NCBI GenBank assembly: GCA_965285935.1
Contig: OZ260662.1
Coordinates: forward strand, 36,456,001 to 36,520,000
Reading direction: 5' to 3'
Length of the DNA: 64,000 nt
Origin: Ophelia neglecta
Lineage: Eukaryota
Made by a program: the position numbers and the translations under genes. Below, piece by piece: positions 26,768-61,179 of the stretch. Positions within the stretch are counted from its first letter, which is position 1. Each line of letters starts with the position of its first letter. Below the pieces are notes generated by a model. It worked only from the letters and a program-made list of their open reading frames with translations, searched no databases and was not told where the DNA came from.

Positions 26768-26896
26768 CCTCCACCTCCATGTCTGACTACCCTGGGTCCT
26801 CAGATGTAAAGATCGGTATAGACGAGCTGTGTCCTGTGTGTGGTGACAAGGTGTCCGGTTACCACTACGGCTTACAGACCTGTGAGAGCTGTAAAG
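26768..26896 (+). CDS. ftz-f1: NR5A/FTZ-F1 nuclear receptor exon encoding zinc finger 1 of the DNA-binding domain
   Basis: Acceptor ttccttgcag|CC. Translation (A)[42 protein letters not shown](G) matches the NR5A signature [26 protein letters not shown] with P-box ESCKG. Donor AAA G|gtaggc. Length 129 nt, phase 1-1. Confidence 0.97.
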
Positions 26897-38800: not shown

Positions 38801-39386
38801 AGGAGGTTTATTAACACTTATTCCATTTACTTCCTTTCCTAAGATCTTTGTCTATCAAACTGCTGAAATTTATTAATTTTATACATGTCAGGAAAATCTA
38901 CTGTTGGTATAGTTCAAATAAAAGGTAAATGATGTAGCAGCAGGAGTAGGTATAGGAGTAAATCATTTCTGTTATTTATGATTGAACTAGGGCAGTTAAC
39001 CAGTATAGCATGGTTGAACAGATATATAAAATAATATATTATTCATACTTCTTACATTCTGCTATGTGGTTTACAAATGGCATAAAAAGACATATTGTAT
39101 GTGTCAAAATTGAAGTCGTACGTTCTAGCAAGTTTACCTTTAGAGAATAAGAAATGCCATTCATCCCCTGTGCAAAAAATTCTGCAATTGTCCTAGCCTT
39201 TGTTAATGAATATTAAATTGATATCACTTTTGTTGCTAGAAATTATTTGCCATTGATAATAATAAAAAATGCTTCAAGAGATGCATGGACAGCACTTAGA
39301 TTGTAGGACACAAATTTCATATTCTGCGTGACTTGAAAGGATAATATATAGTTTTACATATCACGCTCCTTTTATATATTTTGCAG

Positions 39387-39527
39387 GCTTCTTCAAAAGA
39401 ACAGTCCAAAACAAGAAAGTCTATTCATGTGTTGATAACAGAAATTGCCTCATTGACAAAACACAACGGAAAAGATGTCCATACTGCCGGTTTCAAAAAT
39501 GTTTAAGTGTAGGAATGAAACTGGAAG
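39387..39527 (+). CDS. ftz-f1: NR5A/FTZ-F1 nuclear receptor exon encoding zinc finger 2 of the DNA-binding domain (absent from the ORF track)
   Basis: Acceptor atattttgcag|GC. Manual translation gives (G)[46 protein letters not shown], a typical NR5A second finger. Donor GAA G|gtagga. Length 141 nt, phase 1-1, in frame with the previous exon. Confidence 0.97.
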
Positions 39528-39811
39528 GTAGGATTCTTCATTTATCAATTCAAATAACACAGTAACTCCCATTTTATCTATGAATTAAAACACACCAATA
39601 GAATGAGTGCCAAATACATGTACATGTATATGCAGAAGTGCATCAAAACACATTAAAAGATACAAGAATATGTGGAACAGTGAAATAGATTTTGATATGC
39701 CCTTCATAACTTGGTACATACATGTTCAAGTCGTGTGTGGAGATTTGCCAGTTATGAGTTCAGTCAGTTAGTTTTCCTGATGCCTTGCCCATTGGTTGTG
39801 AGTGTACATGT

Positions 39812-40487
39812 TGTGTCAGTCTCCTGGCATGGCCTTGTTTGCATGTGAGATGTATGCTAGTGTATGTGTCAGTCTCCTGCCATGGCCTTGTTTGTATGAG
39901 AGATGTATGCTAGTGGTTGTGTCAGTCCCTTGCCATGGCCTTGTTTGTATGAGAGATGTATGCTAGTGTAAATGTCAGTCTCCTGCCATGGCCTTGTTTG
40001 TATGAGAGATGTATGCTAGTGGTTGTGTCAGTCCCTTGCCATGGCCTTGCTTGTATGAGAGATGTATGCTAGTGTTAATGTCAGTCTCCTGCCATGGCCT
40101 TGTTTGTATGAGAGATATATGCTAGTGTAAATGTCAGCCTCCTGCCATGGCCTTGTTTGTATGAGAGATGTATGTAAGTATGTGTCAGTCTCCTGCCATG
40201 GCCTTGTTTGTATGAGAGATGTATGCTAGTGTAAATGTCAGTCTCCTGCCATGGCCTTGTTTGTATGAGAGATGTATGTAAGTATGTGTCAGTCTCCTGC
40301 CATGGCCTTGTTTGTATGAGAGATGTATGTAAGTATATGTCAGTCTCCTGCCATGGCCTTGTTTGTGTGAGAGATTATCTTAGTGTGTAGGTTAGTCTTT
40401 TGGCAAGGCCTTGTTTGTATGAAATGTGTATCTTAGTGTGTGTTAGTCTTCTGGTAAGGCCTTGTGTGTATGAAACATGTATGTTAG
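39812..40487. repeat. 51/53-bp minisatellite, about 13 copies, each with a GGCCTTG core
   Basis: Unit similar to TGTCAGTCTCCTGCCATGGCCTTGTTTGTATGAGAGATGTATGCTAGTGTAAA. TGGCCTTG starts at 39830, 39883, 39936, 39989, 40042, 40095, 40148, 40199, 40252, 40303 and 40354, followed by two diverged copies. Confidence 0.97.
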
Positions 40488-43400
40488 GATATGCAAGAGG
40501 TTGAGTGGTTTGAGCTATGTGGTAAGTTGATTGGAAGAACACAAAATTGAGTTAAGCAAGATAGCTTGACACTGTGCTAGCAGTATATTAACCCGAGTTC
40601 AGACAATTTCTTCACTGTCGGGCTAAATGCCACGTTGTTTGTCTAGAGCCAGCAAAATTCATATGACTAACTATAAGTAATTTTACCAGTGCTTATCTGA
40701 TAGAACTGCAAATATATTGTCCATTACTACCCCTATGCTTAACAAAGACTCGACACCCATTTTCCATCTATTCTTGCGTGATATTTCAGAGACTGGTGAA
40801 TGGTGTCCATTTAGAATTTATCGATGTATAAACACTATTACTTTCTCTATTGTGCTGGGCCACCGACGATTGAACTAGACAAAAATTTATTCGCCTGTCT
40901 AAAATTGTGTCTGGCACCAGTAAAAGCCTACACAACCATTTAGGATATGGCATCTTCTATGAGCCATTTCTATTTGCACCAAATTCTTTTAAATCTACAA
41001 TGAGCAAGGAGGATAGATATAGATTATTGATGAAGCTTGCGGATGCTGGTATAGAGCATTTTCGGCCACCATTTGGGTTGTCCTTGACCCCTACCGAGGA
41101 CTAGGGGCACGCAAATTCTCCTTGATGGAGGTACTGTTTATACAGACCTAGTTCCTACATTGGAAATCCATGGCAACGGCTTGCATAGCTTTCATTTTAA
41201 CAAAAAAGTTGGTTGGTCGGCACAGAGGCAAGCTCACGTAACTACAGCGGGCTTGTTTAACTTACATAATGGCCACTCTCGGTAGTCGGCAGCTGTTAGC
41301 GTTTACACAGGCCGAACCCTAGCGAAAATCAATCTCTCTGTCTCCCTGTGCAGATAAGCTGCAAGCCAGCCGGAATAAAGTTCTAAAAATGCCTCCGCCC
41401 AGATCCCACACTCCCTTGCTAAGTTGGAGCAGCCTGGCCACACTCTGGATAGCCTCGGGCTTTGGGTGTGCGCCTTTTCGGGCCCAAGGACTCATCAGTT
41501 TAGTAGATACGAGATGTGAAAAGGCCAAGCACAGGCAATTATTTTTTCTCTCTCATCGCCTCCTAGCCAAACTTTCATGGATCAATAGCTTTTCTGCTTG
41601 GGATTGGCATAAGAGTTCAGCCGCTGATATCTTCTTGCTTCTTAAGTAGCAACCCTCTGCTTTCTCAAGTCCATCTTGGGTTACTGCAGTTGAAGTAAAG
41701 AGTTTTTAAATGTGTCTGGATGATGAGAGTGTGTCTCATGAATTTGTCAATCAATTTTAGGCTCTCAGTCTGAATGTTAGGGCTACAGTTGTGCTTTATA
41801 TATTTAAAATGTGCAAAGAAATGATGAAAGTGAAATATATATGTTTAGTGCAATAAAAACTCGAATATTGTTTGCCCCATAAGCATTTCAATCATTGCTA
41901 TCCTATTGATTTCCTTTGCATTTTTTATGAAGCATTGCAGACTTTGGTCTGTGTTTTTGTTCTTCAAACAGTGCATCCAACTGTAGTCTGTTTACAAGAC
42001 CAGCTATTGATTTAGTTGCAGCATGTTTTTGTTGTTTTATATCTAGGCTATATATTTGCCAATACTTCAATACCTTTTAACTACTGGATTGAAACAAGGC
42101 TTTATATTTGCTGCAATTGTGTTTGTGTGTCAATAATGTATATGAATATTAAAAGCATGCCATTTATTACAATTTCAATGCTAACAGCACATATAAAAAT
42201 GTGATACAAATCTACCCATCTCCACTTGTGTACTGATCGTAACCAACTTCACCAGCTGTAGCCATTTTTTTAGCACACCAGTTACATGAATGCAGTCCAG
42301 GGTTTAATATGCTGGCATGGTGAATATTTGGGTGTTGTACTGTAGAGCGGCCCTCGGCAGCCATGAAACTTCCTCCAGTCAAGATAAGGCAGGTCTGTGA
42401 AATGTCCCACCTGGCCTCCTCCTCAGGTGAAAACACATTGCTATGGAAACTTTTGAGGAATCACTCTGTTTGAATTTAGATAACAAACTCCATGTAAAAT
42501 AGTAATGGAGGCTAAAGTTTATATTGCTTTGTTGGCATTAGACTGTCCAGGGGAGTTGTAGAGAACAGACATAATACACAGAACAGTGAAGTTATCAAAT
42601 CTAGCTCTGCATTTATAAAAACAAGTATATTATCAATATCAATGGACTGTGTAATATTTTACAAAATAAATTAACAGAGGCTTGAATCACTCTGCTGGTA
42701 TATCCTAGCTTTTGTGGTAAATGGTGCATTTTTTAGGCGCTTATATCTATTTATTTATTTATTATCTGCCTTCTTTACAAAAGAATTAAAACAGTGCAAC
42801 ATATGTACACATTAGAAAGCTGTAGACAAAATCATACATACATACTCATACATACATAAGTACACTGCTCATACAATAAGAGGCCCACACTATAACATCC
42901 AGCCATATACACAGCCGCCAAAGAGGTAATTAATATTTTATCAGTACCGATGCCTGCCTACTATAAATTATCCTGCCACCCCATGTAACTCTTGTTCTGA
43001 AAAACTATATTGAATATTTATATCATTCATACAACCATACACTGGTATACCATCCATACAAACTCTTCAGGCCTATAGGCCTATATAATGGTGCCAGCTT
43101 CCAGCCATTTACATACTCTAAGACAGCATTTCATTAATTTTATTACAAGTGCGTGCGTGACTGTACGTTATCCAACTGACCATAATTTATGCCACCTGGT
43201 ATACATACAAGCAACTTCTCTTGCTTCCCAAGAAATATATTGTCTTCATATAGTGAAAAAAAATACATGCATCAACTGTGATTCTCTGTTAATGTTTCTC
43301 CATGACATTGTTGCCATCATATATTGCTATTTGAAAGCAACATGTTTACAGTTGTTCAGTTCATGAGTTGATCACTTCAAGCAGCTTAGTGTATTCAAAG

Positions 43401-43982
43401 GCAAGGTTCTAGGCAAAAGTGCAAAAAAAATTACATTGATACTAATAGGCCTATCTGCTGTAGCTTCAATTCAGACCGAGAGTTCATTGGTACCTGACAT
43501 AGTTTGCATGTATTATATCACTGCAGCTATAATGTAGTCTCTATGAATTGTATAGGTTGATGTCACTGACAGGGCCACTCTATATGAGCCTTGTATACCC
43601 AGGGGCAAAATTGGAATGATGAAACTAACACAACCGAAGAGTCACAGACCTGATTAAGGCCCCCAAAACAGGATTATATTAGAAAAATACCCCCAAACGA
43701 GGGGTCCAGAGTCAGTGGTCTGGTGATTTATGGCTCCCATTCTATATTTGGCAAGGAATCTGGAGATGAAAGCCAAGATGAAAACAATTTGTGAATCAGG
43801 CCAGGGGTTGGGGATTGCCCTGCGAGATTCATTGAGACCTTAAAATCCTGCTGCCATTCAATGGCGAAAGGCAGTATCATGCAAAAATAGGATTATATTT
43901 TTCACATTTGTCATCTATCTGGTCCAAACTATTCAAAAGCATTTCTTTTTAGTGTTTCAAATAAGTTTAAGGCTGTTTTTCA

Positions 43983-44195
43983 TGAATGGTAAAAGGCAGT
44001 AACTCCCCAAAAACATGAGGGTGTACACAGGTAAAATGCAGTGTTAGAGTTACTGCCTTATTCATGTGTACAAATGAATGGTAAACAGCAGTAACCTGAA
44101 TTGGTACAGTTGTAGACAGAAGTGTCATATTTTGGTACATTGGTATATAGGTCTAATTGGTAAACAGCAATATCTTCACATGTAAAAGGCAGTTC
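43983..44195. repeat. Cluster of GGTAAAAGGCAGTAAC-like motifs, probably a decayed transposon subterminal region
   Basis: ggtaaaaggcagtaac, ggtaaaatgcagtg, ggtaaacagcagtaac, ggtaaacagcaat and tgtaaaaggcagt, plus an inverted gttactgcctta. Confidence 0.55.
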
Positions 44196-47100
44196 ATGTA
44201 TGGCATAAAGACTTATTTTTATTAAACAAAATCCAGAGACACTTATCTATGCAATATCCTCTCTACAGATATATTTTCATTGTTTTATTTCAATGGTCAC
44301 TGGGAACACCATTGCCTGAGGTTTTTACCAAAGTTACCTAAGCCCAGACCCTTAAAGATGCATCCTAGCTTAGGCATTTTCATGTACATTTTAACCAGTT
44401 CAACCAATTTTATTTTGGTTGCAGTAACATGTTCCAAAATAGAGACACCAATATCATGAAATATACTTCTTGTGTGAACTTAAGCTGCCTTGGTAGCTCC
44501 AAACTGTTAGATTATATTGACAACCACCTGCCAGTCTATTGCCTTAGTGCCTGTCTTTAATACTGTTTGATTATATTACTTACCTTTAAACTGGCCACAC
44601 TGTGAGTTGGTTGTTTTGTTCTTCTTCCTCTTTGTAATGTAACACATTTCAATACAGTTTGATAAAATGGAACAATATAAATCAACCAGGCGCTTTGAAG
44701 AGAAAAAAGAAAACACAGTACTTTGTGTAAGAGACTTACTCATTCAGCCCACTTGAGTTCAATCCATAATAGTGTCCTGCTCAAGGTCTTGACTGTTAGC
44801 CAGAATTCATCCCTATCTAACTGTTTCCTTTCTGTCCTGAATCGCCTGTCCCCCTACCCCCAACCCCTCCTACAGTCAAGCCCCAGTCAATAGGGCGGGT
44901 CAGTCGGTTGGAACACAAGTTAAAACATATTTTTAAAATGCCTTCTAGATGTATGACATTTGTAGGCTTGGGAAATCACATTAACATCAATTTTGTAAAA
45001 GGAATGGTTGGCCATGCAGTTTGCTGATATAGTCCTCATGTACTTGTTGTATCCCAAATGTATGATAATTTTGTGTTTCGACTACATATTAAAGATGCAG
45101 TGTCAGAACTTATTTGGGCCAAGGGTAAAATGTCTGGGTCTGGGTCCATCTTCTACTCAGAAGACAGTATGTAATAAATAGATTTTCCATATGTGTTACA
45201 ACTGATTTAACGCTTTATTGTGAAACAAGTCTTTTTCAAAGATAGTATCTTTGACTGACCATAACCACCTTTTTTGACCTAATATGTTTCAGTGTGCTGC
45301 ATGCATGCATGATGCAGACAACGCTGCCTTGCACCCTAAATGTTACGACGTGTAGTCACTCTTCCAAATGACATCACTGACAAAACAAAGTCATGACTTT
45401 ATCATTTGAGAGCAACATTTGGTGAGAGACAGAATTGTTTGTTAATGGAGACCAACTGAGCAACTCTCAATTCCTGAATTTTTACACTAAGTGACTGAAT
45501 ACGGTATTTCAGTACAAACTGTGCTGTCAGTGAGCTGGGTAATTTTGTATAACACCATTGGGCCATATAAGTGTAGAGTAGTGATGGGTAATTTTTTCTT
45601 TGATATGCTGCAGGATTTATGATTCAAAGCCGTAAGGTACCTGTCGGACTGCTGAGTAAACATGTTATAATGTCACCTTAAGATTAATACCACTCGGGGA
45701 GTGCTACTGTATAGGGCTAGGTTCATGAAAAGATCTTACCTGTGTAGTTATTACCTGCCAATGTTATACCAACCTTTAGATTAACAGGCAGGGTGCAGTG
45801 ACTTTACAAAACAATACATTGTCCCTTTCTAGGGCATATAAAGTATTTGGATGGTAGTATTTTGATTTATTTCAACACAATCAATATCAAGTCAACATTG
45901 CTCTTGACTTGCATGGCTTTTGTGAGCCAGAGTGATAGTACTTTTATGTGTTTTTTTGCATTCTTCAGCACAGAGTATAAAAACTTTATTTACATAAAAA
46001 CTCTATTTACATAACCAATGACTCAATTAGAAGATGATTGGATGACTAGTCTGACAAGTGTAACCTACTTTTTTTTTATAATATCAAAGCTGTATTCATC
46101 TATGACAGCCTCATTGCTTGAGGGCAAACCAGTTTAATTAGCAATGCCACTATTGCCAGTTTCTTGTGGGGTGGAGTTTGGGGGGGGGGGGGGGTAGTCA
46201 GAATATTGCTTGCTAAGTTTTGAATTTAGAAGAATATTAAGCCCCCTTGATAGTTCTCAGTAGCTGATTCCCAACTTGATATTCTCAACTTATGATGTGC
46301 ATTGGTACCTCAATGCACAATTCAAACTAGAATACACGAATCATAACGTTTTCTGTAAACTATTACACTGAATTTATATTAGATTATCTGTGTCAGTTGC
46401 CTCAGGTGGGTCTTGGAGATATATATGTAGTGAGTTTATTAATTCTGAAGTTACATGCATCCCTGGGTAAGACTTGGTGGCTCCAGTGGGAGTATAAAGT
46501 GGGAGTGTTCTGGTTGGGGCAGGTATGGCAATCTCACTTAGACTCTGAGCTGTGGGACCCTGGTGAATTTTGTGGGTTAGGTCAGAGATGATTTAAGGGC
46601 TAATCAATCAGATAATAACAGCTTGTTATTGACCACCACTGGAGGTCTGTATAAGCATCACCTCTGCCATTGGGTTGGCTCTTCTGGCATATAAGTCATT
46701 GTCTGCACCATTCTGGCTGTAAATTTTAAAGAACCCCCTTTGGATTTTTCATTTATGTTGGGCAGCTAGATCATGTAAATCCTGATGTGTCTTATTACAT
46801 TGATTCTGCCTACCAAAACGGTTAAAAATGCCATTTGGTTTATATAGTCCATAAAAAGTCGCTTTGCTGCTACCCCCCACCCCATTTTAGCGATGCCCTC
46901 CCTGTCTTTGACACGTCACTATATAATCCCTGCCTGCCCTCCCTACCTCCTCCCACACACGAAAGGGATGCCTCTTCTTAATCAATTTTCTTCCAGTGCA
47001 TCTCAGTGCTGTGAAGTCATGACCAATGCTTCGTCATAAGTGTGTTCCTCATCAACGTGTGGGTACTATTAATACATAACTTTTATGATTGCCTTATTGT

Positions 47101-50100
47101 TGTTCAACCTGAAGAAATACAATGTACCAATCATTGAGATAGAAAATTTCACAAAGTGAAGTTGTGTGTTGTTATGTTGCACTGCTAGGTGTGTTTGTCA
47201 GCCTTCTGACACTTGTCTGACTAACTTGAGCTGGTTTCATCTCACTTTTCTGCTCTTCAAAAAGAGGACTTGTCTCCCTTGCCACCACATCCAATTCAAT
47301 AAACTCTCCCTCTCAGATGGGTTACAGAAAAGAGGCTTCCAACAAAATTGCTATTTAAACACGTTCCTTAAGACCTCTGCACCGTTTTTCATTCAGTGTC
47401 TCAATGTTTTTTACGCACTGCCGATGTGGCTTTATGGGTTTGTTCCGTTGAGACAGGAAAAGCCATTTAGATAAGGCTGGTTAGGGTTGGAAAAGATGGA
47501 AATATTGCTACTTAAATGCAAGTCTGCAGGGAACATGCATTGCATCTAAACACAAGAGAGCCACTGAAATAGACTAGGAACCTACCAACTTCCTGGACTC
47601 CTTAAGCTTTCATTTTCTTAAGCAGTATACCCTGCTTGTGCCTATTTCCCCCGCTTCGTCTTGTCCCCTCACTGGAGTTGGTTGTTTTCTTTATTCATGG
47701 TTGGTTCTTCATTGTTCTGCCTTAGTTCTCCTCATCTTTTTTTTGCCAAGATCCATTATAGATAGTAAGATGAGGCCATTGATTGGAATTCTGTTCAGAG
47801 CGTCTGTCTAGGATTCAGTCCTGCCATTCCTGCTGAAGCTGGTCACACGTATTGTGTCATTTAAAAGCAGCTTTCAGTCCCCCAGTCTCTTTGGTAAATC
47901 TGTTGATTGAAGTGTTCCACCTTTGGCAGCTTATTGTTTGAAATTCATGTCTCTCACAAGATGTTTCTGAATCCCCTCTTTTTATCAAGTCACTCGGGCT
48001 GGCAGCATGTCGTCACAAACAATTTACAAAAATGACTGTGCTTTAAAATGTGTCAGTTTTCAATTGGGCTTTAGGTTTCTTTTTCACAAGGGTATTGTTT
48101 AATGGGATATTTTAGTATGTTCATATCTGACATGTTTACCCACAGGTAGTTTGCCAAACATGTGTGTGGTGAACTAATGTAGGTTTGAGTCAGTGAGAGG
48201 GCAGACTTAAAACATAACATGTACAAGCATCCATGTGCCTGGGTCCAAGAATTAGCCAGAAATTGTATCCTGAACATGCTTGTAATAATGATTTTAAACT
48301 GACTTCTTTTTAATAATTATTCTAAGATGATTACATATATTATTTAATCAACTTCTTGGAGAGTGTCCTACCAGAACCAAACCTCAGTGGCTCAACTTCT
48401 CATAATTTTTGTTTTCCTGTCTTGAACATGTACCTCTTCTGTTTTTCTTGGCTCAAAAAGTAATTTAGAAAAGTGCTCTGCTATGAATTATGTAGTCACC
48501 ATGCCCAAGGACTGATCAACATTCACATCCTATAAGTTCAAGTCCAAGACCAGTGGATTATGGGGGCCCTAAATTTCAAAGACGAAAAGGGCCCGGAAAC
48601 AAAAACATGAACCCTGGGGTATATGACTGCACATGTATACATGTAGGACCCACGTAACTGAGGTTGGATGACACAGTGTCAGTCAGTCAGTCCCCAAGCT
48701 CAAGCCTACCATATAAACCTGAAAACCTGACAACAAAGCTAGCAGAGTCTTATCTTGATTAGAGCAAGTTCACAAATCTGTGATATCTGACTGTTTGGGA
48801 AGATACCACGTTCCTTTATCTCTTCCAAATGTATCAGACTGGCAAGAAAACCTGCCCTTATTTCTCTTGCCAATGGTTTAATGAAGACTCCTATCAATGG
48901 GTTGATAAATTGGTATGATTGTAAGAAAACAAAAATAAAATACCTTACTAATGACCATGGCCAAAATGTTTTGAATTGTGCAAAACCTTTAAAGATGAAA
49001 AACAAAAAGAATTAAATTTTTTTAAGTGTTTTAAAAAATTGTTATTTTGTGTTTGGATTCATTTCTTTGGGGTTTTCCAGAAGCAAGATGCAGGTTTTAA
49101 CAGATTGGTGCTCCAAATGTATTGGTTATGTGATGGATATGATTCAGGTGACATTTGTCAGTGACCTAATTTATCAAGGTCAAAGGGAAAAAGGTGGGAA
49201 AATTGGCTGAAAGTCAACAAGTCAGGTAAACAGATTGAATATATCCCTATAAATAGATGTTGGGGGGGGGGGGGAGGGGGGGGGGGAGGGGTGCACAGCA
49301 TGCATATTTAACTGTATTTTTATAAACAGGCAACACCAAAGTCACTTTTTGCAGTTATAACACACCTGTAGGTTAACAATTAATTAAGCGTTTGTAAAGT
49401 TTTTTGAATAGTTATTTTTCAGAACTATTCAAAACTCATTGCATAGCACAGGTGTCCTCTTTAACACTGGAGGTAAATAAAGAATATATATATATATTGT
49501 TATTTCAACATGTATTTTGTGAGTGGGACCCTTAAGAGATACTAGAATTGAACCCTTTATATAATTAGGATTGTTAAGCTACACATATATTCTGAATCAG
49601 TTCTCATGTCTTAGAAAATAAAACATGTATCATAAGTCAAACCCAGGTCCATTTACAATTTAGAGGTGCTCTGTGGCATTCAATACGACCATATTGTGCT
49701 TCTCAGGTCAAGTGTTCAAAATGACCTGGGCTGTAAAACATTATATATGTCAAGATTACTTGAATAAACATGGCACACAGTGACATTTAAAATGGTAGCA
49801 TTGGATATCATTACCATCCATTCCATCAGAATTCAATAGTTCCCTATGAAGTGGTGTACAGTAAGTGTTTATAAATTAGGTGCAGATCTATCACAAGCCT
49901 TGAAGAGGTCAGAAATGTTTGTTGATGATTACTGCTACATAGTAGATTCAAAACTCGTCAAGAGCGCCTCTCACACATGAGCTAATACAAAGTTTGATAA
50001 ATCATGCTGACTTATCTGGTATAGGCACCATTTTCTCCTTGGATTATTTTTGACCTGAATAATTCCAAAGTACCTGTTAAGGCAGCATTAAGCTGAGATT

Positions 50101-50879
50101 TATTGTTACATCATCAGTTATCCCGGCAATATTGGTTAATGGATTCCCTGTGTAAACCGTCTTCCAAACAATTATAAAGCTTAGCCAAGTATTAATAAAA
50201 TGATACTTTCTGAATAATAATGCAATAATATTCTGTTTCTCTGTGTTGTGGTTGCTGAAAAAATGACCCAGGGCTTGTGTTGGGGTGGTAAAACCACATT
50301 TCTCCATGAATTCCTACTTATTTATTCTACATGACTTGCTTGATGACTATTGATGTAAAAGATTGGGTGCCAGAGCCTGTTATCAACAGAAATCACTCAT
50401 TGATAACTGTCAGAATGGCAGGAATCAAATTAGAGTTAATGGTCTGCTTTGTCACACAAGACAATAGGAAACGATTCAATTAGAAGCCATTTTCATTAAT
50501 TTGGGTGTAAAAGATGCCATATTTCTATTGGTACATGTACATGTATTGTCTGACATGTCTCTCTTGTTTCTTTTTCTCTGACTCTATTACTGCAAATAAC
50601 ACATTATCTTTGTTGTGAATTCCTACATCGAAAGATAAAAAACAACTCTTACTTGGGTGATAAATGTGTATATTCCATGCAATATATATAAATATTTGGT
50701 AATAGTTTAATTCAGCTCACACTGAGGTATTGAATGTATGTTCTGTTTGTTCAAAAGAAGACAGATTTAGCTGTCCTTACATAGCCATTTTAAATGTGTA
50801 TGTAAATAGTTGTAATAATTGTATGGTTGAGTGTTTTATTTACACTAAAACACATTACTATTACCGAATAAATTTCCTT

Positions 50880-51910
50880 ATTATATACCCCCCCCCCCCC
50901 CCACATTGTTTTCATTGAACCACAGCGTCAGGCGTCTGATGTCTGGCATCCAGCATTCAGCATCCATATTCCTTGATGTAATAAAAAGAAAACCCCTGCG
51001 GTTTTAATTCTGTTTTATTTTGGGCAGCTAGTATACTCGTACATGTATGCCAAAATCTGGGCTAGGATGAATTTGAGTAGCCTTCAGAGAAAAATTTGGC
51101 TGCCAAGGGTGCAAGGCAATTTTTCCTTTGTCTTGCGATAAAGAGGAAAACCCTTGCTGACTAATATATTGTTTGTTTGGCAGCTAAAATATGCAAACAT
51201 CTGACCTAACATTGTTTTTGAGCTATCTCCAGACATATTTATTTGATTTGACCATGGAAATAAAAAGATTGCTGAATTTACACCTTCTTTTATTTGACAC
51301 TTAAATCTTAAATACTATTGAGATGCTCAGAAGCAAATTCAGTGCTGTTTTCAGATATGACATTGACCTACATGTTGAAGGTCAAATCAGTTTAATTTCA
51401 TTGATATGACACTTAAACCTTAAATACTATTGAGAGGCTGTAGAAAGGTATGTGCTGCAAATTCATTTGAGCTTTCAGATTGGACCTTGACTTACAATGA
51501 CTTGTTCCAGGTCAAATCACTAAAATCATGAGGTCAGCCTTAATTGTTAGAAATGGAAGCAAGAACAACATGGGAAGCTCAAATTTTGCAGATTCATTAA
51601 CTTTTCAAATTTGACCTTTGGGTGCATTTTCAAGGTCAAATGATTAAAATCATGATTTCTAATTTTTGCCTAGAGATAGAGCCTAGAACTGAATTGGAAG
51701 TCTTTAGGAAGCCACTTTTTGCTTCTTATTTTACTCCCAGATTTGACTTTAGTGTATGATTTCAAGGTCAAATCACTATATTAATAATGCCAACTATTAT
51801 TTAAACAGCTAAAGCCTAGAACTGCATTAGGAATATTTGTATTTTCGGATTACTCACCCATAAGACCCTTGCTTATAGTAAGAAGTAGCCTGTGAGCAGC
51901 ATTTCAGAAT
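50880..51910. mobile_element. Decayed interspersed repeat with internal ~130-bp tandem units (DINE-1/HINE-like architecture)
   Basis: Starts with a TTATATACCCCC-like terminus and a decayed (GCGTC/GCATCC)n microsatellite at about 50924-50965. Four units follow with TTGACC...AGGTCAAAT at 51378, 51508, 51632 and 51764 (spacing 130, 124, 132). The family assignment is inference from architecture only. Confidence 0.5.
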
Positions 51911-54900
51911 ATCAGAATGTGTCAAGAGGCTGCTGTCTAGTATGCCAGAGTTGGATTAAAGTGCAATTTACCCTTAATGAGGCAAAATGGCCTATCTTGT
52001 AGTCTTTATTGGAGAACAGTATATGTCTGAATTCATCAGTGCAACTGAAATATGTAAATGTATGTATGCTAAGTACATGTGAAGTGACTGAAATACTCAA
52101 GTAATTTTTACAAGATTTTTTTTTGTGTCTAACAAGTGCTTATAAAAACATCTAAGAGAAAATATTATTGATTTTTTTTCTCTCCAATTGTAAGAATATA
52201 AAACATTCCCCTACTAGCATTTAATTTTTCAATTAGACACTGAACAGTTCCTTTTACAGGTGTTGTGAAGGCAAAAGTATTCCACCAATGTGACAATTTG
52301 TTTTCAATGATATTGTGAACTCTTGCAGTTATGAGCCTTTCAAGCCAAGAACTAAGATAAAAAAGAATGCTGTAGTTTTCACTTGAAATTGGCCAGCCAC
52401 TTTCTCCAATCATAGTGCCTTGTCTTGGTGATTGTATGGGTCAGACTGGGCAAATTGCACGATGAGAAGGAACCCCAGTGGACACGCCAATGGGAAAAAT
52501 GTGGTTAGGGCCCTTAATAAATCTGTATGGTTATTATTAAGGACTGTACCATATATCTCTGTTATTTGATAGTCCCATTTTAAATTTAATATCAAGATTC
52601 AAGTGGTCTAATGTCAGTTGTGCCTCAAAAGATTCCAAAAATAATTGTTTGATGTTTGGCGCGGCAAAAATATTGATCTGAGTGGAAATAGCACAATGTG
52701 TACACTTGCTTTCAATGTGTGAGCAGCCTGAACACTGCTGTCAAACTGGCCAACCACCATCAGTTACTAGGGGATTTTTATTGGTACTGGAATTGGGAAC
52801 CTGACCTGATTTTTTCTTTGCTTGGCTCTATATTTAATCCATGTCAAAAACTTATTTTGAGTCATTAATAAAGTAAAGTTGAAGGAACAGTCTTTTGTAT
52901 TTATGATATAATACATATAGAATGAATATTTTTTTATTTTATACATGATTCTTTCTATAAAACATTAGGTCTGTATCCTGTGTGCAGGCTATGTACACTG
53001 TACTGTACATCAAACCAGTACTCTATGTATTTCACATTGTATAACAGTCACCTGACTTGTTTGACTCTGTTTCAGTTTGTTTTATGCCACGTTGTATGCT
53101 GGCCAGTTTTATTGCATACTGTTATTACTATATGTATGTTCAGGACAAGTCACAAGGTTGTAGTGGCAGGTTGATTTATTCTTTAATACTGCATTCAACT
53201 GCTAGCTTCAGATACATATTATATTACCATTGCCTCAGGTTAATGTGCTTGCCTTTCACCCAACGCTGAATAGAATCCAGGTAAATTTATGATAGAATAT
53301 CACTGGTTAGGCGTCAGCTAGGGACAGTTTATTACGAATTTATGGCCCTAGGTTAGAGGGATGTTGGTTCAGACTAAGGCCAGCCACAAGGCTGGCTGGC
53401 TTGGCTAACTTTCTGAGCCTGGTATGTCTATAGAGACCTGGCCAAAACTCCCTCACTTCCCTGGTGAAAAATTGATATTTTGATATTTGGAATCCCAGTT
53501 CTCATAAATTCTCCAGCATCTTAATTTGGTTCAAAGTTTGCGTGCCTTATTTTTGGTTGGTGAGATAAAAAAAACTTAGGGAGTTGCCTCACTCTGTGGC
53601 AGTCTAATCGGTCATTTTAGTTTCGTGTTCTGGTAGCATTTTGCGGGCTGGTGTTAAATGAGGCAAGATAACAATTGTTGTAAGGGTGCAGCACAGTCCA
53701 TTAAGAAAATAAATCGGGGAGTTGAGCCTGCTGATGCCCTCTCTGGAGATAGGAGAGTTTCCGAGCCTGTTTGCTGCAATTTTTCCTGGAAGCTTATCAA
53801 ATAGGTCGACGGCCATATTAGGCTAGGGTCAAACATGGAGCCCTGTGTCAGTGGCAGAATGATGTTCATGTCATAGAGGGTAATTGGCTAATAAGCTTGC
53901 TTATCAACCTTATAATGTGCAGATTAACAGTGCTCTTCCTGGGTTCCTGTCAGGAACTATGGAGAAGAGAAATTCCTCAGCTTTAATTGGTCTGCCTTGC
54001 TACCCAGTGTGGTAAAAGGATTTTGTCTAAAAATTCCTGATTATCTATCTGAATCTTAATAAGAAAAAAACGACCTGACAACAGACAAAATTTGAGATTT
54101 GCTAGTTGGATGTGGATATCTCGATAGATTAGATGGTTTAGGGCCGCTGACTAACATCAGAAGAGCCCCAGACCGGAAAACACAGCTCGCATTGAGTGAC
54201 AGAAATGGCCACCATTTTTTTTCCGCCCTCCAGTTAGTTCATTTTAAGTCTGACAGAGTTATCCTCTAAATCGTTACTGGCTTATCAGGGTAGACAAGCG
54301 GACCAGTCAAATTTAGCATCAATTTACCTTCTGGCCTGAAGCTGTCTGCATTATGTAAGGCTGGTCCTTTCCCGTCAAATTTGGGCTTCAGCAGTCGGCC
54401 TAACGATACCCTTGGCTACACACTTAGAGGAACCCAATGAAATTATTTTGTGTTCTTTAGGCATGAAATAAGTTTACATCTTCTCCTTGCTGGTGATGGG
54501 CAGACAAACCCTCTGTGATGGCATTTTGTTCTGACCGTGAAATCATCAGAATTCTTGTTCTCTGAAAATATTTCTTCATATCTTGATAATTGTAGATTTT
54601 TTAACAGGAAGATAGCTGCTCTTCATATTGTAACTCTATTGAAATGCTTCTCATCTTTCCATTTTATTCCATTTCATGAATTAAAATACCAGTAAGCTGT
54701 TTCGTGTGTTTTCTATGTTCAGAAAGCAAGCAAGGGTAACTGAACAAAGATGCATATCACTCAATTTGTAATAAAAAAAGTGGGTGACTGATAAGAGGAT
54801 AGCAATAATACTTTAATGATAACATCAATTATATAGAGTAGGTATTGAAGGAATGCTAACTCAAATTTTAACAACTCTTGAATTTTCAAATAGTCACTTT

Positions 54901-57900
54901 GATTACTAGGAGTTATTGTTGTATCATTCTAATAGGTTAGAAAAGCCCTCTTGTCATATCCTAGAATACTTTTGAAATAATCAAGTTGGCATGGTTACTG
55001 ACTGGTTAATGACTGTCAGAGTAAGATGGGAGTTTTGGCCTCAGTGGTGTCAAGTACAGGGTCATCTTATCATGTAGTCCAAACATATGATATACATGCA
55101 GGTACAAGTACACCTAGCACCCCTTGTTGACTGCAGTCATTTGCAGGTGCACCTGTGTATACAGTGGTATACAGTGTGTGGTCCTAAATATTTTTTAAAA
55201 AATCACTTGATATTGTATTGGAAATATATGCAAGCACAGCTCACATCTAGATAATTGTTTCAGTAGAATATTTTGTTTTTGCAAAATCACATGTGTTTGA
55301 ATTTGAAAACATCATCTACAGCCAGCTGCTCATATGTTTAACTTCATAGGCTTCTATTTCTGTCATTGATTAGTTTCATGAAAACAATTCATTTAATTCT
55401 ATTGCCATGGATCTGCAGCCACTCTAGGACTGGTCAACCTCCTCCCCCCTCTCCACAGAAGCTGCGTCATGCACATATAAATGTTTGCAATATTTGTCCT
55501 TTTGAATTTTCCTGATTGTAATGGTTATTAGATGAGTTTACATTTTGCCTGGTTTATAGCATTTAGGGCCATTGTCTTCTAGCATAAAATATACATTCAT
55601 AATAGGTAGACAGGTCAATGTTTTTGTTCTAGAAATATAGTAAATGGGTTCAAACATTCCTCTTAACATTCTCGTAATATCGAGCAACATATGAACCAAG
55701 GCATATGGCTGACATAGATAGATGTAGTTGATTTGCATTATATTTGTCAGAACAATGGCTGGAAAACATCATCTACAGCCAGCTGGGAAATATAAAATTA
55801 ATCGAATTGTGTCTCCTAACCCAAAGTTGTTTCCGATGGTTTTTCGAAGGCAGCAACTATAATGCTCATGCTGAGTTCCGCATTCCCTCTCCAGAAGGTT
55901 GTCGGTCTAATTCAAGGCTCACCCCCGTGCACTAAAGATGTTTTATTGAGCATAATATTTGTTGCAGTCAATTATCGCAGTCAAGTACTCAGTTAAATTA
56001 GGGTTGAGTGGAGAAAATACTGCAGAGTGCAGAATGAATGGGCATGAACCCAAATTTTTTTTCAAATCCAGGCATGGTGGTATATCATGCAATCAAAAAG
56101 GCTTGTATTACATGGGTTTCTAGAAAAAAGCTTTAGTAGTAAATAGAATGATATCAGGTTTTATAGACTTGTCATTTGATATAGAAATATGTTAATAGTT
56201 TTCTCATTTATGGGTTCAGAATTTGTATAGCATATATTTATTGTTTTTTTTTCATTTATTTTAATATTTACATAAGTCTTTATTTCATTGATTGGCCTGA
56301 GCAATGGAATACCTAAAGACCCTGTTCGGTTCTATTCTGGCTTGAGTATTATTATATGGTTTATAAAAACCACACTTGTTTTATATTTATTTTGTTTTTA
56401 ATTATATGTTTGAATGCTATTGTTTACATATTGAAATTTAGAACTGGTAGATGTCACAAGAGGTTTAAATCTGGGTGGACTGCTTGCATGTACAAGTGCC
56501 CCCCCCCCCCCATGGAGTCAGTTTGATCAGATGCTATCATATTTTATGGCTTAAAGTCTCTTTTGATTATAAAACTATCAAAAGAATAGTAATGATAATG
56601 AGGGCAAATTTATGAGATTTTGGCATGGGGATGTTTGAAATGTGGGAAGAGGTCTGTGGGTGAGTCCTTGGCTTGTAGTCTTTGGGTGGGCCCCTGAGTT
56701 AGGATCTCAGGCTGGTTTGTTCACAATTATCCAAACATATTCTTATGGTATATTGTTTACAGAAAATATCATCAATTCTCTACGGAATTGTAACTTTTGA
56801 ATCTAATTGATATTTAAATGATAGCAATCATTGTGTAGGTCAAACATAAAACTCTTTTTCAACAACATGTTTTCGGGGTCTAACTTAATCAATGGCACTT
56901 TGACAGAATTTTGTGGTTTTAGAGTCTGCCAAATTTGGCCATACAATTAGTTTTGTAATAGTATATATTTTTTGAAACTCTGCCAAGGTGGCCTAGATCT
57001 AACTGAGAGACATTCTGTGGTTAACGTTAGGATTATAGTTGTAGATGATAATGGCAATGTCCTTAATACATGTGCATGTATGTGACCCGAGACAGACAAG
57101 ATTAATGTTATATCCTAGATGTGGCATATAAATAGGTGCCTCTATTCCAGTGTCCAGTCATATTCAATGGCAGAATTGAGGTGGCAACATTCCTGGACAG
57201 AGTAAGAAAGGAGAGGGGAGCATAAACATACACTATAATATTTGTTTAGAAAATACTTGTTACTGAAAGTCAAAAGTACAAATGTAATTCTATGTATGCG
57301 GGTAGTGCATAAAATGGCAAATAAATGTGCGTATACAAACTGTAAACAGGCATACACGGGCAAAGACAGCATAGACAGCGTAGATACCCGCTGGTCCTTT
57401 TCTTCCCTTATATTCCAGTTTATTTCAAATATCCTTGAATAAACGCAGTAGTAAATTGCAGTGGGTATAACAACATTTGGTTAAGGGGTTTACATCATCG
57501 TACACCCTGGTGATGCTTAGTGGATACACACTTTAAACTTTATATCATATATATTGCGTTCATTGCATAATGATCTTGATGAATTGACACAAACTGTTTG
57601 GTTTTTTCAAACCCTTATTCTCTTATGCATGAAAGTAATCAACCTTGTAGAAAATGGCCAAAATAAGCAGCCTTAGATATAAACCTGAAACAAAACATTC
57701 TTTTTGTATAGTTTTAAATTTCATAATGGGTGACCTGGTGCAACTGATTTGCGTCGTTTAATCAATGCTGAATTAAGTTCTGTATGTCAACAAATCTGAA
57801 ACAGTTTTCTGAAACCATACAAAGGATGTCATGTGGGATGTTTGATAGATAAAAGAAGCCATGAAGTGAGCAGTTGTCTGGAAAATTGAGGTAATAGCAA

Positions 57901-58489
57901 GGCTTTATTAAACAATTGACCAAGATTTCATGATATGACAGGCAAGGGATAAGGACAGGTGTGAGATCTTGCCGTTATACTTCCCCCCTTTTGTCTGTGT
58001 GAGGGTCTCCACAAGTTTTTAAAGCTTCATGCCTACTTTTATCAGATTCAATTATAGAAAATGATGGGTGATTCAAAGTAACCCAGCATTTTGCTTGACT
58101 CCCATAATTATTTCAGAATTAATCATTTCTTTTTTTGTTGGTGCAAAAATGTCATTGCTTTGTTATCAGATTCATTTTGAATATCTGTGTGCACCTCACC
58201 ATGTACAGTTTAGTAAAGTTTTAGTAAAGCCGATGAAACCTTCACCTATTTAGCTGAAAAATAAATGTGCCAGACAAAAACTTCATGTGGTAACAATACA
58301 TGTCCTGGTTTAATCAGGTAAGCTGAAAAAATAACCAGAAAGACTAGCGCTTAAATTCTGATTGTGGATTTTTAAAGATTTCAGTTACTTTTTTTGTCCT
58401 CTCCTCTGGGAGGTGATGGCATGTAAAATTTGCTTGTGGTCAGAATTGACACAGTTTCCTTTTTACCTGATTTGTATAAACCTTGTATC

Positions 58490-58995
58490 AGGTGGCGGCA
58501 AATTCAAAAGTTTGACTGTCTGTATAGTAATTCCACATTGCCAGGCAGCTTAACCATGACATATGAATAGGAAAAGTGAACAATAGGAAAGAATGTGCAA
58601 AGAATGTTCATGTGACCTTGAAATTGACCTTTGCCTCTTTTCAAAGTCATATTGTGAAAATTGCATTTTTAATGCTTCTGATTGCCTGACAGAGAAGAAA
58701 ATAATGTTTAATGCATTGACCACTTATGCCACTTATGCCACATGCAAAAGTGTAGTGGTGACCTTGAATTAAACTCAAGGTCATTGAAAAGTCCATGCCT
58801 TCATGTTTTGATCGTCAAATTCAGTAGTTTTGACAATGCTACCTTATACTACTTGTAACAAAGCTTTCCAGCTTTTAATATATCATTTGGCATGTTTGAT
58901 GGACCATGTTTTTCCAGTGTCCACCTAAAACAAATCTACTTACTGTATGATCAAGTTAGTGAGGAGACTGCTCGCATGCTAAGCTGCCGATCTAT
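58490..58995. repeat. Probable decayed interspersed repeat rich in TGACCTT/AAGGTCA motifs
   Basis: TGACCTTGA at 58613 and 58759, TGACCTTTG at 58625 and TCAAGGTCA at 58775, the same motif vocabulary as 51360-51770. Boundaries are approximate. Confidence 0.4.
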
Positions 58996-60540
58996 ATTTA
59001 TCAATAGTAACCATGAAAGAAATTCTGCAAATCATGCTGAATTAACTAATAAGAAATAGATGGAGAAAAATGACCAGAGGGGTAGTGACATTATTACATT
59101 GTTTTATTGAGCATGCCCTGGAGACAGTGGTCTAGACAAAGCTGTAATTGTTACTGGCTCGCTCAGGGAGAGGGAGGGTGGGGAGGGGAACGGGGGAGGG
59201 GGCCAGTTATTGTCTTTATTGTGCCCATGATTATTTTGATATTGTAGTTGCACAGCATTGCCAATGGCTAGGGAGTTACCAAATCACATACTAACCAGAG
59301 CTACCCTGCTCAGGTAACAAGTCAGAGCCACTGGGCATTGGAGCATGGGATTTCATCCGAGAGCCACATAACTATAAATTATTCAGTGTCACTTTACATT
59401 TTTCGTTGTCCAGTCTGTCTGCGTCTACTCATACATGTATATGATGTCCAGATACAAACTTGCATTGCTTAGATGCTCTCCATTGCAACTGTAGTATAAT
59501 ACCTCAAGCTCATCAGCCCACATGTAGTGTTTTAATGGTAGATTTGCAAATGCTGGCCCAGTTAGACACTTTATATATGTAATTCTTTGACCATCTTGAA
59601 TGATGTAGTTTTTTCACTCTGTCCATATCATCTCCTTCTAGATCACCATTGCTGGTACATGTACGTGTGTTATTTTATGTGCTGTTCATGTGTCCTTTCT
59701 TCTTGTTTATTCCTGCTATAAATTGGTATTTTGCTATGTTACTAGTGAAAAAAGAAAGTCTGCAGTAATATAAGGAAGGAGATTGTTACAAGTATTTAGC
59801 AGGGAAGAGACAGCTTGCGCCATGCTTTGATGATACCAGAAAGAAAATCTATAAACCAAATTTCTGCTTCAGTTGCAAGCAATGGCTGTAATTGAATATG
59901 CCTTGCATTGCCATCAAGACAAATTTTGTCATGTATCTGTGATTATCAAACAGCTATTTGCATGTGCATGACAAAGGCAATACCAGAGGATGTTATCAGG
60001 GAATTTAAGTTGAAAAAATATCGAAACCAGATGAGTATCATGATTTCAGTTCAACATGAATCAGATTGCCTTATTTGTCACAGCCAACATCACAGAAGAT
60101 GCAGAAATGGACCAGCCCAAGTCCGCTTTTATCTGTAAAAAACCTCTTGCGTATTCCTATAATCCTTGCATGGCTTCTCGGAGAAAAACTCTTTGTACTT
60201 GAGTCCCTCTCGCCACCATTTTTATGCTATATTTTCTTTGTTTGCCGCTGCCTCAGTGCCTCGCTGCCGATGCATACGAGGGGGGGGGGGGGACAAAGAG
60301 AATACCAGAAACTCTGAGCTAAATTCTGTTAGCATTTCGCTGACTATTTGCCTGTATTGCTTCAGGGCCCTGGCTATAACAGAATTGGAATCAGTGTGGT
60401 GTCAATCAAAAAACTGATTAAATTGTAGTGCTCTGGTTTTAGGTGGCAGACGATGAATATTATATTTTTGAGCGTTTATCAGAATAGGAACATAAAGATT
60501 CACTGATCAATGTAACTGATTTCTTGGAGCCAGCTGATTG

Positions 60541-60612
60541 TATATATGTATATATATATATATATATGTATATATATGTATATATATGTATATATATGTA
60601 TATCTATGTATG
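60541..60612. repeat. (TA)n/(TATATATG)n microsatellite
   Basis: Read directly from the sequence. Confidence 0.95.
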
Positions 60613-61179
60613 TTATACATGTTAATGTATTAATATTTTATGTGTTTCTCTATCAATCCCTATTTGTGACCAAGTTCCTTTGTACTTTGCATAATTCTAT
60701 TGATTTCTCTACTTTTTCCAGACCTAAAAGCATGTTCTTTATAAGACTAAAGAAATAGATATTGGATGAGGCTTCGAATTAGAAAAAATCAACTCTGATA
60801 AAAAACTATTTTTGGTTTAGATCAGTGATGGATCTTCTAGGGTGTGCTCAATATCCAGCTGATTGTAATAGTCGAAACAAAAGTTTACTAGGCAAAAAGA
60901 TCGATAGGCACACCGGGTGCCAGGATGTGGGGTGCTGAGTACCCAGGTACAATGCTATACTGTTAGGCATCAGGCACAACTGCTTTCAACTCACTCAGAT
61001 TATGATGAATATCATGTCCGCAAAGCTAGTGACGGGACTTAGCATTCTGAGCCAGCATTGATCTCCAGTTCTTAGGTGGAGGATCAGAAACAAAGAGGAT
61101 TTGGGAGATGTCACCTGGCTCTGTGTCACTGCTCCTCACTGGGTGTCACTGGGCGTCACTGGGTGTCATCATGGAGTAG

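What the first reader, a model, noticed from the sequence alone, without database searches (positions are those of the whole stretch)
39812..40487. Tandem array of NR5A-type binding sites inside the NR5A gene itself: candidate minisatellite-built autoregulatory element
Seen: about 285 bp downstream of the zinc-finger-2 exon is a minisatellite in which 11 consecutive units carry TGGCCTTG (CAAGGCCA on the - strand), all in one orientation. Spacing is 53 bp, occasionally 51 bp. Each of these units also has a TGTCA (TALE/Meis-type core) about 15 bp upstream. Established: NR5A proteins bind as monomers to YCAAGGYCR. The array sites match 8 of 9 positions (ACAAGGCCA, once GCAAGGCCA; the first pyrimidine is missing). 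53 bp is about 5 helical turns, so the sites would lie on the same DNA face. Inference: the array could be a homotypic, copy-number-tunable feedback enhancer or a sink for the encoded receptor. It could equally be a neutral minisatellite that happens to contain the motif.
Basis: partly seen in the sequence, partly recalled or inferred. Interest (0 to 1): 0.8.

Follow-up and report, generated by a model that had tools for sequence, protein, structure and literature searches.

The report
Intronic minisatellite with NR5A-like motifs
A 13-unit, 53-bp tandem repeat lies in an intron of an invertebrate NR5A (FTZ-F1/SF-1-type) receptor gene, and 11 units carry a near-consensus site for that receptor; but such arrays are common in this genome and this one is absent from the same intron in three other species, so it is most likely an ordinary young minisatellite.

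Summary
Window 39809-40488 is a tandem array of 13 units of 51-53 bp. Eleven consecutive units carry TGGCCTTG (CAAGGCCA on the minus strand), and TGTCA lies 16 bp upstream of each. The array starts 285 bp after the second zinc-finger exon of a genuine NR5A gene, inside a ~25.8 kb intron whose next exon (with the FTZ-F1 box) lies just past the window end. The unit and both flanks are unique to this locus in the 762 Mb genome.

The functional reading is untested and is the less likely one:
- Tandem triples of CAAGGYCR give about 2,000 matches genome-wide, roughly 300 loci by extrapolation.
- The genome holds about 65,000 perfect YCAAGGYCR sites, so 11 imperfect sites cannot act as a global sink.
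- The TALE hexamer is absent.
- The same intron in three other species has no such array. The nearest relative's contig does not reach the spot.
- The unit pattern (identical non-adjacent units, decayed edges) is that of ordinary minisatellite turnover.

Verdict: a locus-specific, probably neutral intronic minisatellite, with roughly a 12-15% chance of being a lineage-specific NR5A-responsive element.

The parts
26818..26896 (+). Conserved part of the first zinc-finger exon of the NR5A gene ([14 protein letters not shown]...CESCKG, with the ESCKG P-box). The donor GT follows at 26897.
   Evidence: Regex hit on the six-frame translation. Aligns at 85% to the annelid locus L031:3626-3706.
39387..39527 (+). 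Second zinc-finger exon ([15 protein letters not shown]...[14 protein letters not shown]). The donor GT is at 39528-39529.
   Evidence: Translation. Best PDB matches are the NR5A2 DBDs 8pki and 2a66 at E about 2e-23, against RXR at 5e-16. Aligns to the ZF2 exons of L033 and L031.
39528..64000 (+). Intron about 25.8 kb long. It runs past the window end to window-equivalent 65311, where the FTZ-F1-box/hinge exon begins (L015:1312-2238).
   Evidence: [23 protein letters not shown] found at L015:1312 onward, preceded by an AG acceptor. No FTZ-F1 box was found anywhere in window 40500-64000.
39733..39808 (.). Decayed repeat unit(s) at the left edge of the array, without the NR5A-like motif.
   Evidence: Local alignment of the unit to the left flank scores 22 against a null of 14.2 +/- 2.4 (fraction of shuffles at or above the observed score: 0.01). 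The right flank and the exon-donor junction show no similarity.
39809..40384 (.). Eleven core units (53, 51 or 52 bp). Each has TGGCCTTG on the plus strand (ACAAGGCCA or GCAAGGCCA on the minus strand) and TGTCA 16 bp upstream. Three units also contain GTAAGT.
   Evidence: Unit identities: u2 = u8 at 100%, u3 and u5 at 98%, u7 and u9 at 98%.
40385..40488 (.). Two degenerate terminal units, 66-81% identical to the others. They carry the palindrome AAGGCCTT (CAAGGCC kept, final position T) and have no TGTCA.

Best explanation
The feature is a locus-specific intronic minisatellite. It arose in place from single-copy intron sequence by slippage or unequal exchange, and it is still turning over. Its unit happens to contain a near-consensus NR5A half-site (ACAAGGCCA), and duplication copied that site 11 times. 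The array probably has little or no regulatory role. If the receptor touches it at all, that is incidental.

Shown here: the array, its anatomy, its uniqueness in the genome, the gene context and the base rates. Inferred: neutrality.
For: 1. The anatomy is typical of a minisatellite.
- It has 13 head-to-tail units. The non-adjacent units u2 and u8 are identical; u3/u5 and u7/u9 are 98% identical, which indicates recent block duplication.
- The edge units are progressively decayed (66-81% identity), and a further decayed copy sits in the left flank.
- The plus strand is 66% G+T and the array has no CpG.

2. Chance is not small.
- 5.1% of random 53-bp units built from the local composition match at least 8 of 9 positions of YCAAGGYCR, and 0.49% contain CAAGGYCR.
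- The gene holds two or three minisatellites.

3. Motif-bearing arrays are common in this genome.
- Three CAAGGYCR sites at 30-60 bp spacing give 2,006 matches, against 193 for the reversed control.
- The first 100 matches fall in 15 separate loci, so there are roughly 300 loci genome-wide. That gives about 0.02 expected in a 53 kb gene.
- Unrelated 54-bp and 65-bp satellites carry the same core.

4. The invariant stretch in the core units runs about 30 bp, well beyond the motif, so conservation is not specific to the motif.

5. The orthologous intron between the ZF2 exon and the FTZ-F1-box exon has no such array in three species.
- L033: 4.3 kb intron; its ZF2 exon differs from ours by one residue.
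- L031: 2.1 kb intron, from an annelid-like species.
- L027: 0.25 kb intron.

6. Conserved non-coding blocks shared with the nearest relative (L023) exist in the 3' half of the intron. None of them holds CAAGGYCR.
Against: - The CAAGGCCA core is the core of the TCAAGGCCA motif used in NR5A2 binding and nucleosome experiments (PMC11102866), so binding in vitro is plausible.
- GGCCTTG is the longest run invariant across all 13 units, including the two old edge units. The rough probability for a pre-specified block is 0.002-0.02, but this was noticed after the fact.
- The array is unique to this locus and lies in the gene of the very factor that reads the motif.
- Mouse Nr5a1 does have an intronic autoregulatory enhancer (PMC9884658).
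- The nearest relative could not be checked at this position.
Confidence: 0.72

Rival explanations
1. The array is a lineage-specific, homotypic NR5A-responsive intronic enhancer. The receptor binds as a monomer to up to 11 ACAAGGCCA sites and feeds back on its own transcription, and repeat copy number sets the gain.
For: - The host gene is a bona fide NR5A, with the ESCKG P-box, a perfect FTZ-F1 box and AF-2.
- The sites match 8 of 9 positions, with the CA of the 5' extension and the whole AAGGCCA half-site intact.
- NR5A2 binds TCAAGG(C/T)CA as a monomer (PMC11102866).
- There is a precedent for SF-1 autoregulation through an intronic enhancer (FAdE, PMC9884658).
- The unit is unique to the locus.
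- The motif core is invariant in all 13 units.
Against: - No binding, chromatin or expression data exist. No RNA run was found for this species.
- The first pyrimidine of the TCA extension is missing. That extension matters for binding on closed chromatin.
- The base rates make coincidence ordinary.
- The same intron in three other species has no such array.
- No partner TALE hexamer or Pbx-Hox site is present.
- Conserved non-coding blocks elsewhere in the intron lack the motif.
Confidence: 0.14
2. The array is a decoy or sink that titrates the encoded receptor away from its targets.
For: It holds eleven clustered near-consensus sites in one orientation.
Against: The genome holds 64,884 perfect YCAAGGYCR sites and about 2,000 tandem triples of CAAGGYCR. 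These include satellites with the perfect TCAAGGCCA in arrays of 26 or more copies. Eleven imperfect sites are about 0.02% of the perfect ones and cannot titrate the protein globally.
Confidence: 0.02
3. The array acts at the RNA level. It lies 285 nt past a 5' splice site in the sense strand, and its GU-rich units and three GTAAGT decoy donors could influence splicing of the 25.8 kb intron.
For: - GTAAGT occurs at 40174, 40278 and 40329 on the sense strand, and the plus strand is 66% G+T.
- Earlier notes of this scan report many splice-junction minisatellites in this genome.
Against: - The unit has no similarity to the exon end plus donor of this gene: score 12 against a null of 14.1. It is therefore not a junction-derived 'mirage' array.
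- No RNA data are available.
- There is no Rfam match.
- Only 3 of 13 units have a good donor.
Confidence: 0.05
4. The array is an assembly artefact, with an inflated or collapsed copy number.
For: The short-read contigs of the only three public runs break inside the array, and none spans it.
Against: - Contigs from all three runs enter the array from both unique flanks with 0-1 differences.
- The internal k-mer contigs have several-fold higher depth than the flanks, as expected for a real multi-copy array.
- Unit variants are ordered and not random.
Confidence: 0.02

Closest known systems
Locus-specific intronic minisatellites (VNTR-type tandem repeats)
   Same: - The unit of about 53 bp lies in the 10-100 bp range, and the copies are head to tail.
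- Unit variants are interspersed, the edges are decayed and one strand is GT-rich.
- The locus is single-copy and intronic.
   Different: Copy-number polymorphism, the usual hallmark, could not be tested. The only public runs are short-read contigs from one sample.
[quoted passage not shown] 2006, as summarised in PMC9884658)
   Same: It is an intronic element of an NR5A gene that carries sites for the gene's own product.
   Different: - FAdE is a unique, conserved enhancer and not a tandem repeat.
- Here the TALE hexamer TGACAG and Pbx-Hox sites are absent.
- The element is not conserved in the orthologous intron of other species.
- Activity is untested.
Repeat-borne NR5A2 sites: SINE B1 elements bound by Nr5a2 at zygotic genome activation (PMC11102866)
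   Same: Repetitive DNA multiplies a CAAGGCCA-type NR5A site. This genome also has dispersed satellites with perfect TCAAGGCCA or TCAAGGTCA.
   Different: The B1 sites are dispersed retroelement copies with the full TCA extension and measured binding. This array is a single-locus tandem repeat with ACA in place of TCA, and no binding data exist.
Tandem repeats as transcription-factor binding platforms (e.g. bioRxiv 10.1101/2022.05.24.493321, short tandem repeats bind TFs)
   Same: The concept is the same: repeat copy number tunes local factor occupancy.
   Different: That work concerns 1-6 bp repeats beside consensus sites. Here each 53-bp unit holds one near-consensus site, and no occupancy has been measured.
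Splice-junction minisatellites ('mirages'), reported repeatedly in this genome by earlier notes of this scan
   Same: It is an intronic minisatellite near a 5' splice site in the same genome.
   Different: The unit is not derived from the exon end plus donor, and the array begins 285 bp into the intron rather than at the junction.

Membership tests
Minisatellite (locus-specific tandem repeat) | Head-to-tail copies of a 10-100 bp unit, several copies long | tested here: met
   Period 53, 12.9 copies, 88% matches. Thirteen units were resolved.
Minisatellite (locus-specific tandem repeat) | Single locus, not a dispersed satellite or part of a transposon | tested here: met
   The 266-bp query, the 42-nt and 24-nt patterns (up to 3 mismatches) and both flanks hit only this locus in the 762 Mb genome. 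The tool warns that very common words are skipped.
Minisatellite (locus-specific tandem repeat) | Copy-number polymorphism among individuals | not testable with these tools
   Only three short-read contig runs from one sample exist, and their contigs break inside the array.
NR5A (FTZ-F1/SF-1/LRH-1) response element | Half-site AAGG(T/C)CA preceded by CA | tested here: met
   CAAGGCCA is present in 11 units on the minus strand.
NR5A (FTZ-F1/SF-1/LRH-1) response element | Full 9-mer YCAAGGYCR (consensus as cited in PMC3861103) | tested here: not met
   The first position is A (10 units) or G (1 unit), so the match is 8 of 9. The two edge units match 7 of 9.
NR5A (FTZ-F1/SF-1/LRH-1) response element | Bound by the receptor | not testable with these tools
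   Needs EMSA, DAP-seq or ChIP.
FAdE-like autoregulatory intronic enhancer | TALE/Hox partner sites (Prep/Meis TGACAG, Pbx-Hox TGATNNAT) | tested here: not met
   None is present in the array. Only the pentamer TGTCA occurs.
FAdE-like autoregulatory intronic enhancer | Conservation in orthologous introns | tested here: inconclusive
   The array is absent from the orthologous intron in L033, L031 and L027, but those species share no alignable intron sequence with this one. The nearest relative (L023) covers only the 3' part of the intron.
NR5A nuclear receptor (host gene) | ESCKG P-box, FTZ-F1 box after the DBD, and a ligand-binding domain with AF-2 | tested here: met
   - CESCKG is present.
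- The ZF2 exon's best match is the NR5A2 DBD.
- [23 protein letters not shown] is present.
- The last exon ends with ...LLMEMLHSKRK.
Splice-junction ('mirage') minisatellite | Unit derived from the exon end plus splice donor | tested here: not met
   The unit scores 12 against 39470-39570, below the shuffle mean of 14.1.

The most novel reading that the evidence does not exclude
A young, lineage-specific minisatellite has built an 11-site homotypic NR5A enhancer inside the NR5A gene itself. This would give the receptor a positive feedback whose gain changes with repeat copy number, so that regulatory strength evolves by unequal exchange rather than by point mutation.
Probability: 0.12. Interest if true: 0.6.

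Novelty: new member of a known kind. Interest (0 to 1): 0.2.

Why it matters
If the array were functional, it would be a clean natural example of a transcription-factor gene acquiring copy-number-tunable autoregulation through minisatellite expansion, and it could be tested with simple reporter and binding assays.

As the evidence stands, its main value is as a caution. This genome holds about 65,000 perfect NR5A sites and hundreds of tandem arrays that carry the core. A factor's own motif inside a repeat in its own gene is therefore expected now and then by chance. Such a case needs binding, chromatin or conservation evidence before it is called regulatory.

Tried and rejected
- **Dispersed repeat or transposon origin: rejected.** The unit and both flanks are single-locus.
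- **Relation to the 54-bp, 65-bp and 28-bp motif-bearing satellites: rejected.** Similarity does not go beyond the motif itself (shuffle fractions 0.08-0.85).
- **Splice-junction ('mirage') origin: rejected**.
- **TALE partner sites: rejected.** The hexamers are absent.
- **Copy-number variation and expression from public reads: not obtainable.** There are three short-read contig runs from one sample and no RNA run. Contigs break in the array.
- **Nearest relative's copy of the array region: not found.**
  - Its only contig on record (L023, 34 kb) stops about 10 kb short of the position.
  - The word search with the ZF2 exon found no ORF from that species.
- **JGI metagenome scan with the unit core:** 0 hits.
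- **Rfam scan over 38500-41500:** nothing.
- **Loci set aside.** L024-L026, returned, carry a vertebrate-type NR5A2 exon and could be human-like. I did not align, compare or search them further.
- **No joined model.** Exons were searched one at a time by reference.

Full report
**Observation.** The stretch is a real tandem array.
- Tandem Repeats Finder gives one array at 39812-40487, with period 53, 12.9 copies and 88% matches.
- Anchoring on GGCCTTG resolves 13 units between 39809 and 40488, with lengths of 53, 51 or 52 bp.
- CAAGGCCA occurs 13 times in the 64 kb window, 11 of them on the minus strand inside the array. Shuffles give 2.8 +/- 1.8.
- The 9-mers are ACAAGGCCA ten times and GCAAGGCCA once, which is 8 of 9 against YCAAGGYCR.
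- TGTCA lies exactly 16 bp upstream of the motif in all 11 units.
- The last two units are degenerate (66-81% identity). They read ..AAGGCCTT.., keeping CAAGGCC.

**Gene context.** The host gene is a genuine NR5A, and the array lies in one of its introns.
- The first zinc-finger exon ends at 26896 and carries the ESCKG P-box.
- The second zinc-finger exon is 39387-39527. Its best solved relatives are NR5A2 DBDs at E about 2e-23, against 5e-16 for RXR.
- No FTZ-F1 box exists in the rest of the window.
- I fetched 80 kb downstream. The next exon begins at window-equivalent 65312 (L015:1312) and opens with a perfect FTZ-F1 box. The hinge and the start of the ligand-binding domain follow. Three more LBD exons end in an AF-2 helix at about 80,066.
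- The array therefore lies 285 bp into a ~25.8 kb intron.
- Exons were examined separately. I built no joined protein model.

**Is the unit dispersed?** No. Each of the following hits only this locus in the 762 Mb assembly:
- a 266-bp piece of the array;
- a 42-nt core and a 24-nt core, each with up to 3 mismatches;
- both flanks.

The caveat is that the tool skips very common words.

**Anatomy.** The unit pattern is that of ordinary minisatellite turnover.
- Units u2 and u8 are identical. The pairs u3/u5 and u7/u9 are 98% identical although they are not adjacent.
- The outer units are the most diverged.
- A further decayed copy lies in the left flank at about 39733-39808 (unit-versus-flank score 22, null 14.2 +/- 2.4).
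- This pattern indicates block duplication and homogenisation in the centre and decay at the edges. It points to an origin in place from local sequence.
- The sense strand is 66% G+T and the array has no CpG.
- GGCCTTG is the longest run invariant in all 13 units. Among the 11 core units, however, the invariant stretch runs about 30 bp, well beyond the motif.

**How surprising is the motif?**
- The 11 sites are one duplication series, so the question applies per unit.
- Random 53-bp units were drawn from a second-order model of the locus.
- The gene holds two or three minisatellites.
- Genome-wide, three CAAGGYCR sites spaced 30-60 bp apart give 2,006 matches, against 193 for the reversed control.
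- The first 100 matches fall in 15 separate loci. Extrapolated, that is roughly 300 loci, or about 0.02 expected in a 53 kb gene.
- These loci include dispersed 54-bp and 65-bp satellites that carry TCAAGGCCA and GCAAGGCCA. They are unrelated to this unit beyond the motif.
- Perfect YCAAGGYCR sites number 64,884 in the genome, against 22,473 for the control.
- The coincidence is thus of order 1-5%, and it was noticed after the fact in a scan of very many windows. That is not compelling.
- The same count disposes of the sink idea. Eleven imperfect sites are about 0.02% of the perfect ones.

**Partner motif.** TGTCA is only a pentamer. The Prep/Meis hexamer TGACAG and the Pbx-Hox and Pbx-Meis composites are absent from the array.

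**Comparison with other species.**
- A full HMMER search with the hinge exon found one close relative. This is P0001, 80% identical, from ENA assembly ERZ25069296.
- Its contig (L023) aligns collinearly with this locus. It reveals conserved non-coding blocks at 53789-53926, 54166-54283, 59825-60133, 60982-61129 and 62439-62493. None contains CAAGGYCR.
- That contig ends about 10 kb short of the array position. A word search with the ZF2 exon found no ORF from that species.
- Three more distant species do cover the whole orthologous intron:
  - L033 has a 4.3 kb intron, and its ZF2 exon differs from ours by one residue.
  - L031 has a 2.1 kb intron. Its protein falls in the same 90% cluster as a Lamellibrachia satsuma protein.
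  - L027 has a 0.25 kb intron and is AT-rich.
- None of the three has a tandem array with NR5A motifs. L033 has a single TCAAGGTCA about 1 kb into the intron.
- None of the three shares alignable intron sequence with this genome. Their lack of an array shows that it is lineage-specific, not that it is useless.

**Reads.**
- Only three runs hold the stretch. All are short-read contigs from one sample, and none is RNA.
- The contigs enter the array from both flanks and break inside it. Internal k-mer contigs have several-fold higher depth. This fits a real multi-copy array, but it gives no copy number and no polymorphism.

**Known biology.**
- NR5A proteins bind as monomers to TCAAGG(C/T)CA. TCAAGGCCA is the motif used in NR5A2 nucleosome work (PMC11102866).
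- YCAAGGYCR is the cited SF-1 consensus (PMC3861103).
- Mouse Nr5a1 has an intronic enhancer that is started by Hox-Pbx1-Prep1 and maintained by SF-1 itself (PMC9884658).
- Binding of the receptor to the units is therefore plausible, and intronic autoregulation has a precedent.
- The missing first pyrimidine of the TCA extension is the weakest position of the consensus. It is still reported to matter on closed chromatin.

**Verdict.**
- The array is a locus-specific intronic minisatellite that is most likely neutral (about 0.72).
- A lineage-specific NR5A-responsive enhancer remains possible (about 0.14).
- Minor alternatives are an RNA-level effect (0.05), a sink (0.02) and an assembly artefact (0.02).
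- It is a new member of a known kind and of low interest unless binding and chromatin data say otherwise.

**Handling notes.** Loci L024-L026 are vertebrate-type NR5A2 contigs that could be human-like, and I left them unused.

Noticed in passing
window 51560-51840: Two perfect TCAAGGTCA sites (51630, 51762) lie in a dispersed repeat with a period of about 135 bp. It has at least 410 first-look candidates across the genome, often in tandem. Perfect NR5A consensus sites in this intron are therefore partly repeat-borne.
   Followed up: partly
whole genome G000; examples L028 (C1:5075800-5079100) and L029 (C1:3195300-3198500): Perfect YCAAGGYCR is 2.9 times more frequent than its reversed control (64,884 against 22,473). 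Tandem triples of CAAGGYCR are 10 times more frequent than the control. Part of the excess comes from dispersed 54-bp (TCAAGGCCA) and 65-bp (GCAAGGCCA) satellites. This recalls the SINE B1 and Nr5a2 case in mouse, but I did not analyse it further.
   Followed up: partly
window 53789-53926, 54166-54283, 59825-60133, 60982-61129, 62439-62493; downstream window-equivalent 70079-70818 and 78418-78697: These non-coding blocks are conserved at 73-88% with the nearest relative's contig L023, while the surrounding intron does not align. They are better enhancer candidates for this NR5A gene than the array. None contains CAAGGYCR.
   Followed up: partly
window 61123-61759: G-rich, strongly GC-skewed nested tandem repeats (periods 56-100 bp) lie in the same intron, next to one of the conserved blocks.
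   Followed up: no
window 39531: All three public runs read A where the assembly has G, at position +4 of the ZF2-exon splice donor (GTAGG against GTAAG). Other nearby differences separate X1 and X3 from X2, so more than one haplotype is present in the sample.
   Followed up: no
window 58613, 58759, 58775: Three perfect TGACCTTGA/TCAAGGTCA sites fall within 170 bp, two of them as an inverted pair 16 bp apart. Only weak partial matches exist elsewhere in the genome. The stretch does not align with the relative L023.
   Followed up: partly
L033:6729: The relative with a ZF2 exon differing from ours by a single residue has one perfect TCAAGGTCA about 1 kb into the orthologous 4.3 kb intron. About 0.26 are expected by chance, so this is not significant alone.
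   Followed up: no
L031:3725-5674 and L031:11943-14420: The annelid-like NR5A locus also has long intronic minisatellites (46-bp period with about 40 copies; 31/60-bp period with about 70 copies) in other introns, none with NR5A motifs. Large intronic minisatellites in NR5A genes are not peculiar to this species.
   Followed up: no
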